Shown here in pieces: positions 8,858 through 15,651 of a stretch of 64,000 nucleotides of DNA. The first letter of the stretch is position 1. Each line of letters opens with the position of its first letter. The translations under genes and the position numbers were made by a program. The stretch is taken from positions 62,001 to 126,000 of IMG/VR virus record IMGVR_UViG_3300050014_000823; one strand, written 5' to 3'. Under the pieces are notes generated by a model. The model was not told the DNA's origin, did no database searches, and saw only the letters and a program-made list of their open reading frames with translations.

Positions 8858-9411
8858 ATTAATTATGTCTATCGTGTTTAATAAAAAATTCGTTTACTGT
8901 CATTTCTTTGCCCTGTGCATACTGACCTTTCTCAGTTGCCATAAACTTCTGCAACTCTCTTTTGATTTCACCTTCTGTTGTTGGATTTAAACCTTCACTC
9001 TCAAGATACTTTTCAAATTCACTTCTACATTGATAACAAACATATCCGATGCCATTAACATACGTATCACACATTATCTGTGGACAATCCGGTCTACTAC
9101 AGTTCATTACGCCCATTCTGGTTTCCTTTCTAATATTTCAACGTATTTTTTAAAATACTTATGAAGTTCATCGAGTTCATCCGTCAAGATTTCATACCTC
9201 ATGCTCTTAAGTACCAGCAGGGGATATGGCTGTTTCATTATGTCGGCATGAAGATAGAAATAAGCCTCACCTATACCATTGACACAACAAACCCTTATCT
9301 TATCTTTTATGAAATGAAATTCCCTTTCCTTCGAGGAAGGATGATTATTGTAAATCTCCACATAACCTTTTGGCAATAGCCAACTTGTTATTGTTTTGTA
9401 AAAAATATCTG

Positions 9412-10440
9412 TCATATTTTAATCATATTTAATCCTAAAACCAATGCTTCTTCAAAGGCATCCTCATATTTATCCTTACATTCAGAACTTACACTGCAAT
9501 CAGCAATACATTCTTTTAATGTAACTAAACCATAATATTTAAAACAACCTTCCCGGCTTAATTGGGGAATATAAAATGGTTTGACGTATACTTCAATACC
9601 ATGTACTTCTCTTAACCATTTCGCAAGTACTGACTGTGTTGGTGCATATAAGTATTTATTAGTGCTGAATTTAATACTTCGTAGACTTGTTAAATTTTTA
9701 GTATCCTTATGATATACAAATGAACTTTTGACCTTATTATTAATAATGTCACATATTTCAAAGGATAATATTTCCGATATGTGTATATTTATACTTTCAT
9801 TGTTTATAAAAACACCAGTTTTCTCTAAATTTTCTATTGATTTTACTTTAACTTCCTTATAATGTTCACAACTTATTGTAAAATATTTTACTATTTCTTC
9901 TTTACTTAACTTTCTATCTGAAAATAAAAATTCTTTATGATAATCTTTATTATTTAAAACTTCACATATTTTCGAATCACTAATTTTCAATTGTCTACTA
10001 CATTCGCTTATGGAAGGAAATAAATATTCAATATGATTTTTATCATAAGCAAATAAACATCTGCCCACCTTTTCAGCAAAAATACTTCTTCTTTTTTGAA
10101 TTTCTTCCATAGTTAAATCTTTATATGGATAAGATGCTATTTTGGAAACATTAAATCCGTTATCCGTATATGATTTATAATAATCCATCCAGTATTGCTC
10201 TCTTTCTATTAATTTTTCCTTTTCACAAAATTCCTTTACTTCAAATATAAATCCCTCGAAGCCATGTTTGTTACAAAAATTTTGTAATTTAGGATTAGTG
10301 TGCCGATTATTTTTAAGTTTATTCTTATGACAATAAATTCTTGAATACATATTTATTGAACTTCCTATGTAAACCCTCTCAGTATTTTTATGCTTTATAA
10401 TATAAACACCGGGTTTTCTATCTAAAAAAGGTCTTCCCAT
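9412..10440 (-). CDS. GIY-YIG homing endonuclease fused to the C-terminal part of a conserved phage protein
   Basis: GVYIIK..VYIGSS..R, EREQYW, NUMOD1-like FPSISECSRQL; tail YAPTQSVLAKWLREVH. Confidence 0.85.
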   Translation of the reverse strand: MGRPFLDRKPGVYIIKHKNTERVYIGSSINMYSRIYCHKNKLKNNRHTNPKLQNFCNKHGFEGFIFEVKEFCEKEKLIEREQYWMDYYKSYTDNGFNVSKIASYPYKDLTMEEIQKRRSIFAEKVGRCLFAYDKNHIEYLFPSISECSRQLKISDSKICEVLNNKDYHKEFLFSDRKLSKEEIVKYFTISCEHYKEVKVKSIENLEKTGVFINNESINIHISEILSFEICDIINNKVKSSFVYHKDTKNLTSLRSIKFSTNKYLYAPTQSVLAKWLREVHGIEVYVKPFYIPQLSREGCFKYYGLVTLKECIADCSVSSECKDKYEDAFEEALVLGLNMIKI

Positions 10441-11032
10441 AACATTATTTTATGCTTATGACACAAATATCATGCCAAGATTTCGCAAGTTTTGCTGTTG
10501 CTAGACCTATTTTTGTATCTTCAATTGGTTTTTCCATTATGCTTTTATATGTAAGTGTAATTCCTCTACTACTTGTTTAATTGACATACCTGCCAATTCT
10601 TTAAAATCCTCACGTTTAAGTTTTGGCTGAGTACTAAAGGAACACGCCATACCAATAACATCGGTTTTAATATTGCCATTTGGTCTACTATCCATTAAGT
10701 CAATTGCTGTTGCAAGTAAACGAAATTTTTCTGCAAGACCAACATCTTTTCTTCTATTTCTATTACTTTTCATTGCTTATACTCTCCATTTAAAAGATTC
10801 ATATTAAAAATAGTTGTGTTTAATGCAATACTGAATTCCATTAAAGAGATTTCAGTATAATTAGTGTGTTCAAGAAAACCAACAGGATGTGTGCAAATCA
10901 AACCATTTGAAGTAACAAGAAGGACATCATTTGCTCTTTGATGATAATAAAAATCAACAGACTTATAGCAATTTCCCACAGGTTTACAAGGCTTATTTGA
11001 ATATTTATGTTCTATGACCTTAAACGTTAAAT

Positions 11033-12112
11033 TCATATCAGTTCGTTTTTAATTATTTTCTGTGTACTCCAATGCCCGTGATTATTCTGTACGTGATTTT
11101 TCCGTACATATTTACCACAGACTTTACGAAATTCTGAGTAATGATACTCTCTTGCAAGTCGTACAACATACCGTTCAATTGTTCCGGGGTTGTTCTCCAT
11201 TTTCTTGTTAAGTTCATTAATGAAGTCCATATCCCAAATACCATCATACATAATTGTTGGTGTAACCAATCCCAATAATTCAAACCATTCCTGTGTTTCA
11301 TCCCAATCCAAGCACATGTTTTTCTCATTCCATATACTAAATGCAAGAAAAATTGATTTTAATGCATTGCCATTTGCTTTGGTATAATGTATTGCATGCT
11401 TTGCATACATATTCTCGCCACATAATCTCCAATCTTCCGGAAGTTCGTAACCAATTTGTGCCCATAGATTTTTAACCCAATTTCTTGAAGAATGACTGTC
11501 AGTATCTAATGAACGTGCATGTATGATATCTTTCATCATAGTAGTGTTCTCGCCATCCATTTTTTCCATAATAATTACACGTTGACCTTCGAATATTGAG
11601 ACATCTTCCATCATGCGGTCATCCCTATTCATGCCAGGTGACCAAGGTAGGTGAAAAGTACGATTGTATTTCACCCTATTTGTGAATTGTCCTAATATAT
11701 TACCTTGATTTAATATCTTTTGAACAGAATCATCATTAAAAAGTTCACCTTTTATTCTCGTACCGTTACGTAAAATTTCATTACCCCACTTGTCATATTC
11801 TACGTCTTCATATAAATGTTGTGGTAATACAATTGTTTTAATACCCGCTAATTCTCTGATTCTATCACACGAAAGAATAGTTTGTTCTGCTTCAATATGA
11901 TGAAGTTCGCAAAGCGTTGCCCCGTTATCAATGAAATATCCCTCACCAAATGGTTTAAATAATCTACGTTCAAGTATGTGATGTGCACTTAAATTAACTA
12001 CTTCACCGAATTGGTTGAATTGTGCCTTTTCACCACAAACAATGCATTTGTATCCATCCCTCTTAAGAACAGCATTTCTAAATTCATCCCGTGTTAATTC
12101 GTCTTTCATCAC
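11033..12112 (-). CDS. HNH domain-RNA ligase fusion
   Basis: RDGYKCIVC..AHHILERR..NGATLCELHH; ligase KYNRTFHLPWS, EKMDGEN, GEN, KYVR. Confidence 0.85.
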   Translation of the reverse strand: MMKDELTRDEFRNAVLKRDGYKCIVCGEKAQFNQFGEVVNLSAHHILERRLFKPFGEGYFIDNGATLCELHHIEAEQTILSCDRIRELAGIKTIVLPQHLYEDVEYDKWGNEILRNGTRIKGELFNDDSVQKILNQGNILGQFTNRVKYNRTFHLPWSPGMNRDDRMMEDVSIFEGQRVIIMEKMDGENTTMMKDIIHARSLDTDSHSSRNWVKNLWAQIGYELPEDWRLCGENMYAKHAIHYTKANGNALKSIFLAFSIWNEKNMCLDWDETQEWFELLGLVTPTIMYDGIWDMDFINELNKKMENNPGTIERYVVRLAREYHYSEFRKVCGKYVRKNHVQNNHGHWSTQKIIKNELI

Positions 12113-12117
12113 AATAA

Positions 12118-12960
12118 TTATTTACTAAAATATTCTTTTATATCTCCGGCACAATTATAATCTTTCTCATATATCACATAATATTTTTTCTTAAGAGATT
12201 TACCAATAATTCTTCTATCTTTTCTTGCATGTTTAATATTACAATATATGAAACCAAAAAAATCAGCTACTTCTCTACAGTTATTAAAGGTATGTGCAAT
12301 TTCAAAAGTATTACTATCAAGGACTAATGTTTTGTTTGACTGTATTTTAGATATTTTATCTCGATACTCCTTAGATTTTCGTGACTTTTGAAATTTTTCG
12401 GAACTTATCATCGCCAACCGATTAATTTCAATTTGACTTGCAGACAAAGTAAATCGTTTACCAAACATACCATTATTTTCTCCCTCATTTGCCTTAGATA
12501 TTTTATCTTTTGTTTCTTGAGTAAGAAAATTACGCTTACCACCCAAATCAATGTTGGTTAGTTTGTTACTTTTATAGTATTCAATCCAAAATATTTCTCT
12601 TTCGTCAATATCTTTAATGTCAACTTCTTCAATTAATTCTATTAATATCTTATTAGCAATACCTTCCTTTATTAAACCAAGTATCCAGTTCTCTTTATGT
12701 GTTAATTGTTTATTCAATTTAACACTACGTACAGTTTCGTAAATATGACTTTTTAATCTTTTATTTAAAGTCAATATTGTTTGTCCAATGTATCTAATCT
12801 CATTAGTCATCGGACATTTTAAACAATATATATATCCTTTCATAACCATAAATACTTGTAATGTTATGATAAGTTCTTGGATATTTAAAATAAAGTGATT
12901 CGCACCGTCTCTTTCGAATACGGATTCCCGGAAAATATCTCTACTTAATAGTGTTTTCAT
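12118..12960 (-). CDS. GIY-YIG homing endonuclease (internal start ~12843) with in-frame vestigial RNA-ligase N-terminus
   Basis: GYIYCL..RYIGQT..RL..H, EREIFWI, NUMOD3 GENNGMFGK. Confidence 0.85.
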   Translation of the reverse strand: MKTLLSRDIFRESVFERDGANHFILNIQELIITLQVFMVMKGYIYCLKCPMTNEIRYIGQTILTLNKRLKSHIYETVRSVKLNKQLTHKENWILGLIKEGIANKILIELIEEVDIKDIDEREIFWIEYYKSNKLTNIDLGGKRNFLTQETKDKISKANEGENNGMFGKRFTLSASQIEINRLAMISSEKFQKSRKSKEYRDKISKIQSNKTLVLDSNTFEIAHTFNNCREVADFFGFIYCNIKHARKDRRIIGKSLKKKYYVIYEKDYNCAGDIKEYFSK

Positions 12961-12965
12961 ACGAC

Positions 12966-12995
12966 ATTATACGAATATAAATGGAAAATGTTACA
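12966..12995 (-). promoter_or_regulatory. Phage promoter motif TGTAAC-N18-TATAAT
   Basis: attatacgaatataaatggaaaatgttaca. Confidence 0.8.
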
Positions 12996-13159
12996 GTTTC
13001 AACAATATAAATGATACCAGTCCCTATTATGGACCTCTAAAAGTTCAGGGTGGTGTTCTATGAAATTGTTGATAATTGGAATTGCTTGGTCGTCATCCAT
13101 ATGAAACACTGCACAACGAATATCGTTCAGTAGTTCTTCGAATGTCTGGTCTTCGGGTT

Positions 13160-15651
13160 TCATTTGTTATATTTTTCCACAAGATTAAAAATCTTCTTAG
13201 GTATGCTGAGATTTATCTGAGGATTTCTACTTTGAATCTCAAGCAATTTATTTATCATTGACTTTGATAGCCAACTATAATGTATCTGATTTTGAATGCC
13301 ATTAAGATATGCATGGTCCGAATCTGATAATTTTTCTGGGAAAATTCCTGCGTCATTATCGACAATAGCCTTTTTACAACTACCAAGAATTCCATAGATA
13401 AAATTACTATCTCTGGAAGTACTTACCCGATGAAATGCGTAGATTTTACAAGCACTTTTGTCTTTGAGTCCTTTGTTATTCCTTCCGGTAAGTTCAATAC
13501 GACAGATTTCTGGATTTTCAATCCAATTAAAAATCTCGTCTTTCTTTATAAGATGTTCTATGCGTATCATGAATGATTATACGTAAAGCCGGGAAAAATG
13601 TTACAATTATTCCTCTTTTTTTTCGTGATTTTTTTGATTTTTAATGACCATTATGACGGTCCATGTGAAAAGAAAAGCGAAGATTCCGCAACATATATAA
13701 CCCCAAACTACTTCATTGGGTGCGACAGTGGTTTTGTGTACTCCGTAGACATACACTAACAGGTAGAGAGTATAGATTATCCCTTTCACAATCTTCATCC
13801 ATATTAAGGTTATATATAGAAGTTATTTACATTCCTGGTCTGTTCTGTCTTTAAATACTCATAAATAATTAATCGGCAAGCAATTCCTCAATTGTTTTAC
13901 CACAAATAATGCATTTTCCTCCATCACTTTCAAATTTATGTACGTGATGTGTTGGGTCTTCAACTTTCTCAACAGGAATTTCTATCTTACTATAGTCTTT
14001 ATTTTCGCCCATGCTTAAGTAGTTCAACGTATTTAAATTTCAGCACAATCAAGTCCAGACCTGTAGTTAAACCATCAAATGCAGTTTGTAGTGTATTGTG
14101 ATTTACAGGCGTACAAATTTCTACGTATGCATCAAACTCTCGTTGTTTTTGCTCAACAATTTTCCGCAGTTCTTCTACCTTCATCTTGTAGATATTATCT
14201 GCCCAAGTCTCAATTGAGACTTGTTCGTAGATTGGAGATAGGTCTTCTGTCATGGCTATTTATGTAAAATGTTGACGTTAACAGTATCGTTTAACGGTTT
14301 CACAGTACCCCAAGGACTACTAATCCACACATAGGTACTATCATTAATCGGACGAACTCTGATTGTATCTTTCATTGCATCTGCTTGACCCTGTACGTAA
14401 CCTGCTTCCATAATCATTTTCATTTCCAATAAATGATATTGGACATTGGCAGCTTCTTGTTTCTTCGCAACTTTACTTACATAAACAAGCAGTCCCATAC
14501 AGATTAGAAATCCAATGAACATAAGAATCAACCTGTTTCTTTCGCCCTTTGCAAGTTTTTCCATTACTTTGTAAGTTTCTTAACACCAGTTAATTGTGCA
14601 ACCTTAAGTCCTTCGAACTTAAAATTATACTCAAAAAGTGTTGGATGATTTTTCTGTGCCAGAGCAAGTTCACTCTCGTGATAGCGCACACCTTTGAAAA
14701 TAGGTGAGTTACCAAGGTTGGTACGAACTTCTTTGTCTTCGACAGGTGAGTAAACCTTTACGGGTTCTAATGTAGCTTTGTCCATGTTGCGTATATAAAT
14801 TTAGTTAGCAAACTTACTGTTATTTTATCGGATAATCAAGACTTATTCAAAAAATTGTGGGGAAAAAGTATATGGTCCAAGAAACCCCACGATGTCTGGT
14901 TGCATTTCCCAATCGTAACCGCCACTATAATAATCGTATGAACCCAAGTAACGAAGTTCAACTATCATAATATTAGTTGTCGGGAATACAAACTTTGACA
15001 AGTTTTCTTCTGGTTCGGGTTTAAATGGAGTCTTAGCAAGCAATGCCTTGAAATTAATATCTTTAAACAACTCAACTATGCCCGATTCGCCAAACTCATA
15101 ATCCAACTGATGGTCAACAGGATATATATTAATGAAAATAATCTTCTGTGGTTCACGTACTTCTTCTTGACCTACAAATTGCAAGTATTGTCCTGCATCG
15201 CATAGGTGTCCGTCACCCCGGAGACTATACTCAGGAAGATGGTCAAATACTTCCTTGTGGTTATTATGAACTTTCCATAGTTCAGCAATGAAATTTTCTG
15301 AAATTTCATGCAGCTCTACCGACATTAAACATCTGATTGTTTTTGACATTATCTTGTATATGTTACGAAATAGTAGTGAAATTCTCCATTAACATCGAAT
15401 TGCTTCTCAACCGATTTTTTGACAATAAGTTCATCTGACTCATGCATTCTCAAAGCATCAATGGAAAGCGGTTCGTTCAGTCCCAACAATCCGTTACCTG
15501 AACGTTCCAATATTTTACCAATGATTACACATTCACCATTACGTGTATTGAACAGGCATGAAATATCTTCATCGCCACCTAAGTCCCATTTTTCCTGCTT
15601 ATCTAACTGCACCAATATGTCGTAGATAAAATATTGATTTGTACGTGCCAT
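13160..15651 (-). other. Run of small hypothetical ORFs
   Basis: Packed ORFs 13160-13570, 13607-13798, 13999-14253, 14256-14564, 14564-14785, 14843-15349, 15349-15651. Confidence 0.6.
13576..13605 (-). promoter_or_regulatory. Phage promoter motif TGTAAC-N18-TATAAT
   Basis: attatacgtaaagccgggaaaaatgttaca. Confidence 0.8.

What the first reader, a model, noticed from the sequence alone, without database searches (positions are those of the whole stretch)
11033..12960. Endonuclease insertion duplicated the RNA-ligase N-terminus: old start feeds the nuclease, new start rescues the ligase
Seen: the endonuclease ORF begins MKTLLSRDIFRESVFERDG and the downstream ligase begins MKDELTRDEFRNAVLKRDG, which are homologous but diverged. 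The first copy follows the early promoter and is in frame with the GIY-YIG domain, which also has its own GTATTTAT motif and ATG at 12843. Inference: the mobile cassette carries a cleavage-resistant replacement 5' end and could yield two isoforms.
Basis: partly seen in the sequence, partly recalled or inferred. Interest (0 to 1): 0.6.

Follow-up and report, generated by a model that had tools for sequence, protein, structure and literature searches.

The report
Homing endonuclease footprint in ligase gene
A selfish nuclease gene landed in front of a jumbo phage's RNA-ligase gene, brought about 80% of a foreign ligase copy with it, and left the first 21 codons of the old ligase upstream, fused in frame to the nuclease: a natural footprint of how such elements rewrite the genes they target.

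Summary
The ORF at 12960-12118 (- strand) opens with 19-21 codons of a genuine RNA-ligase N-terminus. These codons match HEG-less relatives at 18/19 aa and 59/62 nt. They sit behind the ligase's own consensus promoter, at the syntenic position where the ligase starts in relatives. They run in frame into an I-TevI-like GIY-YIG/NUMOD3 homing endonuclease (HEG) whose family start is ATG 12843.

This is not a duplication. The intact ligase downstream is a mosaic. Nt 1 to about 880 belong to a HEG-associated allele class (93% aa to the nearest HEG+ relative). The last 170 nt or so, like the stranded start, match the resident P0019-type allele (95% aa). The best reading is intronless homing with a long co-conversion tract and an illegitimate left junction.

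The HEG's conserved leader holds an older fossil: 21 nt encoding the ligase motif KYPRTYH. Ligases behind this HEG type never keep that Pro (6/6). The likely homing site is therefore about 400 nt inside the ligase, not at its N-terminus.

Cleavage, resistance and the two isoforms remain untested. This is a new, well-documented variant of a known kind.

The parts
12999..13163 (-). 54-aa ORF (o54), used as a synteny anchor
   Evidence: Its homologue (45% aa) ends 40 nt before the ligase ATG in HEG-less locus L014. Here it ends 38 nt before the stranded start.
12966..12994 (-). Ligase promoter of the phage's consensus class (GTAACA-N17-TATAAT), with ATG 5 nt after the -10 element
   Evidence: The strict pattern has 4 matches against 0.14 expected, and there are 11 consensus copies in the window. 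The same promoter precedes the ligase in L011, L014, L017, L019, L007 and L040.
12899..12960 (-). Remnant of the resident ligase gene: codons 1-21, 62 nt
   Evidence: It matches L011 at 59/62 nt and P0019 at 18/19 aa. In the lake-water variant codon 20 is Gly, as in P0019.
12887..12898 (-). 12-nt spacer between the two fossils
   Evidence: It has no significant match to the ligase. In the frame of the next element it reads Leu-Tyr-Phe ahead of KYP, so it may belong to the older fossil.
12866..12886 (-). Older fossil or possible operator: a 21-nt copy of the ligase site encoding KYPRTYH, at the 5' end of the nuclease's conserved leader
   Evidence: It matches the ligase site at 20/21 nt in L006 and 19/21 nt in L002/L003, with 0/300 shuffles as good. 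The homology stops exactly after the His codon. In L022 the same piece still has its own ATG and reads MEQYYKYPRTYQ-stop.
12840..12869 (-). Leader hairpin whose 3' arm holds the nuclease AUG; it contains AGTATTTAT at 12856-12848
   Evidence: The helix is 11 bp with 89.5% of cells paired and one covarying pair. z-scores are -2.6 to -5.8 in 5 relatives, but only -0.6 here because of two substitutions. The motif occurs 9 times against 1.7 expected.
12118..12843 (-). GIY-YIG/NUMOD3 homing endonuclease, 241-aa form from the family's own start
   Evidence: NUMOD3 hits at E 1.9e-7 and PHROG 5123 (GIY-YIG) at E 1e-4. 5 of 15 family members hit PF01541. Y6, Y18, G20, R29, H33, E83 and N97 are invariant. 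The model has pLDDT 86 and its best folds are the I-TevI catalytic domain, TM 0.65-0.72.
12118..12960 (-). 280-aa fusion ORF: 21 ligase codons, 18 leader codons, then the nuclease
   Evidence: The frame is open throughout. A parallel in-frame fusion with an 8-codon remnant occurs in L017/L018.
12121..12336 (-). C-terminal DNA-binding module of type X, swapped relative to most family members
   Evidence: In alignment A1 this module is shared only with P0135. All other members carry type Y.
11033..12109 (-). Intact RNA ligase (HNH-like N-domain plus PF09414), 358 aa
   Evidence: PF09414 hits at E 2e-23. PHROG 24030 hits at E 3.5e-125, with HNH PHROGs on aa 5-85.
11204..12109 (-). Imported (donor-type) part of the ligase, nt 1 to about 905
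   Evidence: This part is 88-91% nt identical to the HEG+ loci L007, L040 and L017, against 66-69% to L011/L014/L015. The clade has 100/100 support, and AU rejects a resident-type placement at p 2e-8.
11651..11671 (-). Candidate homing site in its altered form (KYNRTFH)
   Evidence: It differs at 7 of 21 nt from the leader copy. All 6 ligases behind this leader type lack the Pro, against 8 of 10 HEG-less loci that keep it.
11033..11203 (-). Resident-type 3' end of the ligase
   Evidence: This part is 95% aa identical to P0019 but 83% to P0002. Informative sites switch from 238:29 to 6:27, max chi-square 97, with 0/2000 permutations as high. The alignment is shown.

Best explanation
A free-standing, I-TevI-like GIY-YIG homing endonuclease gene (HEG) entered this jumbo phage by intronless homing, and the locus is the footprint of that event.

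**Reconstruction (inferred)**
- The resident genome carried a P0019/L011-type HNH-RNA-ligase gene behind its own consensus promoter.
- During co-infection with a phage carrying [leader-HEG-ligase], the resident ligase was broken.
- The likely break point is its KYPRT(Y/F)H|LPWS coding site, about 400 nt into the gene.
- Repair copied the donor leftwards through the donor ligase 5' part, the HEG and its leader.
- On the right, the exchange resolved by homologous crossover in the first well-conserved stretch, at ligase nt 880-905.
- On the left there was no usable homology. After resection, the end was joined illegitimately at nt 62 of the resident gene.

**Result (shown)**
- The order is: resident promoter, resident codons 1-21, HEG leader, HEG, donor ligase nt 1 to about 880, resident ligase 3' end.

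**Consequences (inferred)**
- The ligase stays intact and now carries an altered site (KYN instead of KYP), presumably immune to the HEG.
- HEG and ligase are co-transcribed from the old ligase promoter.
- The HEG can be translated as a 280-aa fusion from the old, possibly leaderless start.
- It may also be translated as the 241-aa form from ATG 12843, whose sequestering hairpin is weakened in this genome.
For: **The remnant is the resident start, in place**
- It matches P0019 at 18/19 aa and L011 at 59/62 nt.
- The same promoter precedes the ligase in relatives, and o54 gives the same synteny as in L014.

**The ligase is a mosaic**
- Max chi-square is 76-97, with 0/2000 permutations as high.
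- The 5' part is 93% aa to P0002. The 3' part is 95% to P0019 against 83% to P0002.
- The 5' clade of HEG+ ligases has 100/100 support. That clade dissolves in the 3' part, AU p 0.029.
- The switch is visible in the alignment.
- P0019 is the best match of both the remnant and the 3' end.

**The HEG is polymorphic at this site**
- HEG-less relatives have one start joined to the ligase.
- HEG+ relatives: L007/8, L017/18, L019, L040.

**The architecture recurs**
- L017 has an 8-codon remnant in frame, and L019 has 5 codons followed by a stop.
- In L022 an old short-ligase start is still intact ahead of the HEG.

**Evidence for the target site**
- The 21-nt ligase-site copy in the leader.
- Pro is lost in 6/6 ligases behind this leader, against kept in 8/10 HEG-less loci.
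- 84 of 105 scorable homologues have KYP.

**The family is ligase-linked**
- Every locus with a full-length HEG relative and enough flank has a ligase beside it.

**The HEG looks active**
- The catalytic residues are invariant and the fold is I-TevI-like.

**Precedent**
- One-sided homing with illegitimate junctions and long resection has been shown experimentally in T4 (review PMC2988022).
Against: - No cleavage data exist, so the homing site is inferred from footprints and a correlation that is not corrected for phylogeny.
- HEG-less L009 and L010 also carry KYN. They could be the source lineage or could have lost the HEG.
- The window's HEG has a different C-terminal DNA-binding module (type X) from the relatives that define the leader/site pattern. 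Its specificity may therefore differ.
- The nearest HEG+ ligases (L007, L040) carry a nuclease only about 37% identical, so the actual donor has not been found.
- Tree tests on the 171-nt 3' part are marginal: WIN+L007 held together gives p 0.07.
- All four HEG+ ligases switch at the same place. That fits a homology-limited crossover zone, but also fits a single old event followed by exchange at the 3' end.
- L017 and the window have the same 7-codon spacing between RD and the leader. One shared event followed by a 30-nt deletion cannot be excluded.
Confidence: 0.75

Rival explanations
1. The promoter, remnant, nuclease and ligase 5' part travel together as one cassette. On this view the stranded start was imported, and is not the resident's own start left in place.
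For: - L017/L018 show the same order, with identical 7-codon spacing between RD and the leader.
- The consensus promoter recurs 11 times in the window and could serve as a recombination site.
Against: - The remnant sits exactly where the ligase starts in L014-type synteny, 38 nt after o54 here against 40 nt there.
- The remnant and the ligase 3' end both match P0019 best.
- The neighbouring genes are closest to the L011/L015 group, not to the HEG+ genomes.
- L017's remnant lies in a different, L006/L002-like upstream context, and its sequence fits that background.
Confidence: 0.13
2. The ligase 5' end was tandemly duplicated in place (by slippage or unequal crossover), and the nuclease later inserted between the copies.
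For: Two homologous N-termini lie on the same strand about 850 nt apart.
Against: - The copies share only 30/57 nt, with a pattern typical of long protein-level divergence.
- Each copy is far closer to a different ligase lineage: 59/62 nt to L011, and 88-91% nt to L007/L040/L017.
- No HEG-less relative has two copies.
Confidence: 0.03
3. The window's ligase is vertically inherited, and the apparent mosaic reflects rate differences or recombination in the comparison genomes. The remnant would then be an unrelated leftover.
For: - The 3' end is the most conserved part of the gene in all homologues.
- The AU test for WIN+L007 on the 3' part is not significant, p 0.07.
Against: - In the 3' part the window is closer to L011/L014/L015 (85% nt) than to L007 (76%). 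In the 5' part the order is reversed, 66-69% against 90%.
- No single tree with rate variation gives that reversal.
- The site-pattern test gives 0/2000 permutations as high.
- All four HEG+ ligases have mutually discordant 3' ends.
Confidence: 0.06
4. The arrangement is a metagenome assembly chimera joining two phage strains.
For: The record is a metagenome-assembled virus, and a second ligase-bearing contig is present in the same runs.
Against: - Single contigs of 47 kb and 36 kb span the region at even depth in two runs. These may be the source of the DNA, so they are not independent.
- A lake-water run from another study holds a 94% variant across the remnant-nuclease junction.
- Analogous junctions occur in JGI and Logan assemblies of L017/L018.
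Confidence: 0.02

Closest known systems
Free-standing GIY-YIG Seg endonucleases of phage T4 (SegB, SegE, SegF, SegG): intronless homing
   Same: The nuclease gene lies beside its target gene, not in an intron. It is present or absent at a fixed site among related phages, and flanking markers are co-converted over hundreds of bp (reviews and papers PMC2988022, PMC2330249).
   Different: The target here is an RNA-ligase gene in uncultured jumbo phages. The tract boundary and the left junction are preserved as sequence fossils. The nuclease ORF is fused to the target's old start. Cleavage was not shown.
I-TevI (td intron endonuclease of T4)
   Same: It has a modular GIY-YIG catalytic domain, a linker (NUMOD3) and a C-terminal DNA-binding domain, and it is the best structural match. 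It is regulated by a hairpin that hides the initiation region, and it binds an operator resembling its homing site in its own promoter.
   Different: There is no intron here (Rfam negative). The hairpin buries the AUG itself, with no Shine-Dalgarno sequence visible. An operator role for the 21-nt ligase-site copy is only a hypothesis.
One-sided homing by illegitimate double-strand-break repair (Parker, Belisle and Belfort 1999, as summarised in PMC2988022)
   Same: Homology on one side only, long resection, and a junction without homology on the other side. This is exactly the geometry inferred here.
   Different: That was a laboratory construct with the td intron. This would be a natural product, fixed in a phage lineage and seen at two nested levels.
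Genes split by homing endonucleases: mobE in nrdA of phage Aeh1, mobA in T4 gene 60/39
   Same: A nuclease gene is inserted inside a conserved coding region. The second nuclease of this window (9412-10440) does just that to a neighbouring gene.
   Different: At the ligase, the gene is not split. A complete replacement copy follows the nuclease, and only a 21-codon stub is left.
Nuclease genes at boundaries of genetic exchange between phages (PMC10448857)
   Same: The nuclease gene marks a mosaic boundary between otherwise diverged genomes (abstract).
   Different: Here both ends of one exchange tract can be mapped to within a few tens of bases.

Membership tests
GIY-YIG homing endonuclease (I-TevI/Seg type) | GIY-(10-11 aa)-YIG motifs with the conserved Arg, Glu and Asn of the catalytic domain | tested here: met
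   Y6, Y18, G20, R29, H33, E83 and N97 are invariant in A1. PHROG 5123 hits at E 1e-4. 5 of 15 family members hit PF01541, best E 7.6e-9, though the window's own protein is below the Pfam threshold. The top PDB folds are the I-TevI catalytic domain, TM 0.65-0.72.
GIY-YIG homing endonuclease (I-TevI/Seg type) | Modular linker and C-terminal DNA-binding domain | tested here: met
   NUMOD3 hits at E 1.9e-7 in the window protein and in 15/15 family members. The C-terminal module is helical. Modules A/B and X/Y are shuffled among relatives.
GIY-YIG homing endonuclease (I-TevI/Seg type) | Presence/absence polymorphism at one site among related genomes, with co-conversion of flanks | tested here: met
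   HEG+ and HEG-less loci share the same promoter and ligase. The ligase is mosaic.
GIY-YIG homing endonuclease (I-TevI/Seg type) | Site-specific cleavage of the nuclease-less allele and immunity of the nuclease-bearing allele | not testable with these tools
   Only indirect evidence is available: the 21-nt copy of the site in the leader and the loss of Pro in linked ligases.
Intron-encoded homing endonuclease (group I intron) | A self-splicing ribozyme around the nuclease ORF | tested here: not met
   No intron family was found in 9000-14500 at E up to 1. The downstream ligase ORF is complete in itself.
Target-site duplication by a transposable element | Short, identical direct repeats flanking the insert | tested here: not met
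   The two copies share 30/57 nt and belong to different allele lineages.
Hairpin-regulated T4-type homing endonuclease genes (I-TevI-III, segB, mobE of Aeh1) | A stable RNA hairpin hiding the translation start, plus an internal late promoter that frees it | tested here: inconclusive
   The hairpin over the AUG is strong in 5 relatives (z -2.6 to -5.8) with one covarying pair, but weak in the window at z -0.6. AGTATTTAT in the loop is enriched in the window, 9 against 1.7 expected, and often precedes ORFs. Its promoter role is untested.
RNA ligase PF09414 with N-terminal HNH-like domain | Nucleotidyl-transferase domain match, intact KxDG motif, and HNH-type Cys/His pattern at the N-terminus | tested here: met
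   PF09414 hits at E 2e-23. PHROG 24030 hits at E 3.5e-125, with HNH PHROGs on aa 5-85. The motif EKMDGEN is present. No solved relative was found by sequence.

The most novel reading that the evidence does not exclude
This nuclease family may use the fossils of its own invasions as working parts.

- The 21-nt copy of the sensitive ligase site at the head of its leader is kept under selection. It is more conserved than the nuclease's coding DNA.
- That copy could serve as an operator or homing-site mimic for autoregulation, as known only for I-TevI.
- In this phage the element may have gone one step further and captured the target gene's possibly leaderless promoter and start codon.
- The nuclease would then be made as a fusion that bypasses its own hairpin-repressed AUG, which has begun to decay here.

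If so, serial 'start capture' would be a general route by which free-standing homing endonucleases acquire expression signals in new hosts.
Probability: 0.2. Interest if true: 0.65.

Novelty: new variant of a known kind. Interest (0 to 1): 0.55.

Why it matters
Homing endonucleases are thought to drive much of the mosaicism of phage genomes. The individual events are almost never visible, because clean homologous repair leaves no scar.

Here both ends of one event are preserved:
- an illegitimate left junction at nt 62 of the resident gene;
- a homologous right crossover at nt 880-905.

An older footprint of the same kind is embedded in the element's leader.

This matters for three reasons:
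- It gives a natural counterpart to the one-sided homing seen so far only in engineered T4 crosses.
- It points to a precise, testable homing site (the KYPRT(Y/F)H|LPWS coding DNA) for an undescribed, ligase-linked GIY-YIG family that is widespread in freshwater, peat and sediment phages.
- It shows how such an element can take over its target's promoter and start codon.

Tried and rejected
- **Group I intron around the nuclease:** Rfam found nothing.
- **Close relatives in the phage collection:** megablast found nothing, and the best cultured-phage ligases are only about 50% identical.
- **Sequence search of PDB:** no hit for the ligase or for the nuclease profile. Foldseek E-values for I-TevI are weak (0.03), although I-TevI ranks first.
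- **Homing site in the first 57 nt of the ligase:** among 10 HEG-less genes, synonymous-site conservation there is not unusual, 0.57 against about 0.5 elsewhere. This idea was dropped in favour of the KYP site.
- **Remnant continuing into the AHHII region after an internal deletion:** the 24-nt piece after codon 19 has no significant match anywhere in the ligase.
- **Leader similarity to the AHHII coding region:** 12/14 nt, judged to be chance.
- **Microhomology at the left junction:** the donor's sequence there is unknown, so this was not pursued.
- **Tree-based proof of the mosaic on the 171-nt 3' part:** marginal only, AU p 0.029 / 0.12 / 0.07. The claim rests on the site-pattern test.
- **RNA evidence for transcripts or isoforms:** no RNA run holds the stretch, and all runs laid are contigs, so starts and strands cannot be read.
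Full report
**What is there**

All genes discussed lie on the - strand. The window is part of a 299-kb IMG/VR virus record, 91% complete by CheckV. Peat metagenomes hold it.

Reading downstream, the locus contains:
- a 54-aa ORF, o54 (13163-12999);
- a promoter (12994-12966);
- a 280-aa ORF (12960-12118);
- 8 nt of spacer;
- a 358-aa ORF (12109-11033).

The 358-aa protein is an RNA ligase. It hits PF09414 at E 2e-23 and PHROG 24030 at E 3.5e-125, and aa 5-85 form an HNH-like domain.

The 280-aa protein has three parts: 19-21 residues of ligase N-terminus, 18 residues read from a leader, and a GIY-YIG/NUMOD3 nuclease.
- NUMOD3 hits at E 1.9e-7, and PHROG 5123 (GIY-YIG homing endonuclease) at E 1e-4.
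- 5 of 15 family members hit PF01541.
- The catalytic Tyr, Arg, His, Glu and Asn positions are invariant.
- The AlphaFold model has pLDDT 86, and its best PDB folds are the I-TevI catalytic domain.

No intron RNA family is present. No terminator-like site lies between the promoter and the end of the ligase.

**Check of the observation**

The two N-termini share 11/19 aa and 30/57 nt. Second codon positions are the most conserved and third positions the least. They therefore diverged long ago while both were coding.

The upstream copy is a real ligase start.
- Among 120 homologues its best match is P0019, at 18/19 aa.
- The DNA is 59/62 identical to the ligase start of locus L011, which encodes P0019.
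- Homology ends at 12899.
- Only this window has two copies of the motif. 22 other loci have one.

**The stranded start is in its original place**

- In HEG-less L014, the homologue of o54 ends 40 nt before the ligase ATG. Here o54 ends 38 nt before ATG 12960.
- The intervening promoter belongs to a consensus class with 11 copies in the window. The strict pattern has 4 matches against 0.14 expected.
- The same promoter precedes the ligase in L011, L014, L017, L019, L007 and L040.
- In four window copies, this one included, the ATG follows the -10 element by exactly 5 nt. That geometry is compatible with a leaderless message. This is inference.

**The ligase is a mosaic**

- The nearest ligases (L007/8, L040, L017/18) are 91-94% identical in protein, and all have a GIY-YIG gene directly upstream.
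- Over nt 1 to about 880, the window is 88-91% nt identical to them and 66-69% to L011/L014/L015.
- Over the last 170 nt or so, it is 76-85% to them and 85% to L011/L014/L015.
- In protein, the 5' part is 93% to P0002. The 3' part is 95% to P0019 and 83% to P0002.
- Informative sites switch from 238:29 to 6:27 at window 11233-11203. Max chi-square is 97, and 0 of 2000 permutations reach it. The switch is plain in the alignment.
- Trees give a 100/100 clade of the four HEG+ ligases on the 5' part. Placing the window with the resident type there is rejected at p 2e-8.
- On the 171-nt 3' part the clade is gone, with AU p 0.029 for the four held together. Tests for the window alone are marginal, p 0.07-0.12.
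- The flanking genes of the window are closest to the L011/L015 group, not to L007.
- The same allele, P0019, is the best match of both the stranded start and the 3' end.

Taken together, a P0019-type resident gene had codons from about 21 to about 295 replaced by [leader-nuclease-donor ligase codons 1 to about 295].

**Relatives with and without the nuclease**

HEG+ loci keep the ligase promoter, followed by remnants of different length:
- 8 codons in frame in L017/L018, where the annotated protein begins METLLDRD;
- 5 codons and a stop in L019;
- about 3 codons in L007/L040.

L017's upstream context is L006/L002-like, so its remnant too seems to be in place. The window and L017 share a 7-codon spacing between RD and the leader. 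I cannot exclude one common event followed by a 30-nt deletion.

A lake-water run holds a 94% variant spanning 12608-12962. There codon 20 is Gly, as in P0019.

**An older fossil, and the likely target**

The nuclease start is preceded in seven loci by a conserved 45-nt leader.
- Its first 21 nt (window 12886-12866) are a copy of the ligase DNA encoding KYPRTYH. It matches L006 at 20/21 nt and L002/L003 at 19/21 nt, at ligase nt 400-425, with 0/300 shuffles as good.
- The homology stops exactly after the His codon. The ligase continues with LPWS, and the leader continues with its hairpin.
- In L022 the piece still has its own ATG and reads MEQYYKYPRTYQ-stop. The real short ligase after the nuclease starts MTTYYKYQRTLHLPWS. 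This is the same 'old start, nuclease, new start' architecture, one level older.
- KYPRT(Y/F)H|LPWSPG is the most conserved stretch of the protein, with aa identity 0.94.
- Ligases behind this leader type never keep the Pro. They carry N, N, A, S, K or Q (6 of 6), against Pro in 8 of 10 HEG-less loci (Fisher p about 0.004, not corrected for phylogeny). Among scorable homologues, 84 of 105 have KYP.

I infer that this site is the homing site and that the altered site confers immunity. This explains why at least 430 nt of ligase must travel with the nuclease.

The common end of the tract, near nt 880, falls at the first well-conserved stretch beyond a strongly diverged region.

**Regulation**

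- The leader is more conserved (73-95%) than the nuclease's coding DNA (65-73%) among distant cassettes. It is therefore functional.
- It folds into an 11-bp hairpin whose 3' arm contains the AUG. Across the alignment 89.5% of cells are paired, with one covarying C-G/U-A pair. z-scores are -2.6 to -5.8 in five loci.
- In the window two substitutions weaken it (z -0.6). One of them creates an extra in-frame ATG at 12849.
- The loop motif AGTATTTAT is enriched in the window, 9 against 1.7 expected, and often lies 13-20 nt before ORF starts.
- This resembles the hairpin-plus-late-promoter control of T4 nuclease genes, and I-TevI's operator that mimics its homing site (PMC2988022). Function here is untested.

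**Mechanism and comparison with known systems**

The geometry has three elements: a homologous crossover on one side, an illegitimate junction after long resection on the other, and a nuclease gene beside a resistant allele of its target. This matches intronless homing by T4 Seg endonucleases and the one-sided, illegitimate repair shown with the td intron.

The locus meets the sequence- and fold-level criteria of a free-standing GIY-YIG homing endonuclease. Cleavage specificity could not be tested. It is neither an intron element nor a transposon-type target duplication.

**Novelty and score**

I found no paper describing ligase-linked GIY-YIG elements or such nested remnants. The kind of element and the repair route are known.

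What is new:
- the target gene;
- the preserved junctions;
- the reuse of a target fragment as a conserved leader;
- the in-frame capture of the target's start.

I rate it a new variant of a known kind, with interest 0.55.

Noticed in passing
window 9412-10537 (- strand): A second GIY-YIG nuclease (342 aa, 9412-10440) splits a neighbouring gene. A 30-aa ORF (10537-10445) keeps the first 19 aa of the L011 159-aa protein (86% identity). The last 83 aa of the nuclease ORF are that protein's residues 77-159 (77% identity; PHROG 12005). This is a nuclease fused in frame to the 3' part of its host gene.
   Followed up: partly
window, 11 sites, e.g. 4346, 6733, 12972, 13582, 19229, 23728, 42486, 46335 (-); 50747, 57740 (+): There is a strongly conserved promoter-like consensus (T-rich, GTAACATTTT, about 9 nt, TTACGTATAATC). 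In four copies an ATG follows the -10 element by exactly 5 nt, which suggests leaderless messages.
   Followed up: partly
window 9651, 17761, 23780, 34510, 41904, 46985, 57417, 60255: AGTATTTAT occurs 9 times against 1.7 expected. Most copies lie 13-20 nt upstream of an ATG, so this may be a second promoter class of the phage.
   Followed up: partly
window 12118-12843 compared with L007:4264-5004, L017, L019, L020:2224-2997: The nuclease family shuffles modules. Catalytic domain type A or B combines with DNA-binding domain type X or Y in all four ways: window A+X, L017/L019 A+Y, L007/L040 B+Y, L020 B+X. L007 and L019 are near-identical genomes that differ by the catalytic module.
   Followed up: partly
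loci L020-L024, L031, L033-L038, L043-L045, L059: Full-length relatives of the nuclease are almost always next to an RNA-ligase gene, in every orientation: upstream, downstream, divergent and convergent. This includes short ligases that lack the HNH domain.
   Followed up: partly
window 10770-11036 (- strand): An 88-aa ORF overlaps the ligase stop (ATGA) and sits between the ligase and the 78-aa ORF that directly follows the ligase in L007. Its only homologue among the loci lies elsewhere, upstream of the ligase in L006. This is another small insertion at the locus.
   Followed up: no
window 11975-12050 (ligase aa 20-45): The nuclease-linked ligases of the window's clade (window, L007, L017, L019, L040; also L045) carry a loop about 10 aa longer between the CxxC and HH motifs of the HNH-like domain than all HEG-less relatives. 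L023 is nuclease-linked with the short loop, so the link is not absolute.
   Followed up: partly
window 11038-11495, runs X1 and X2: The same peat runs contain a 1305-nt contig of a second, diverged ligase-bearing phage at similar or higher depth. Potential recombination partners therefore co-occur in the sample.
   Followed up: no
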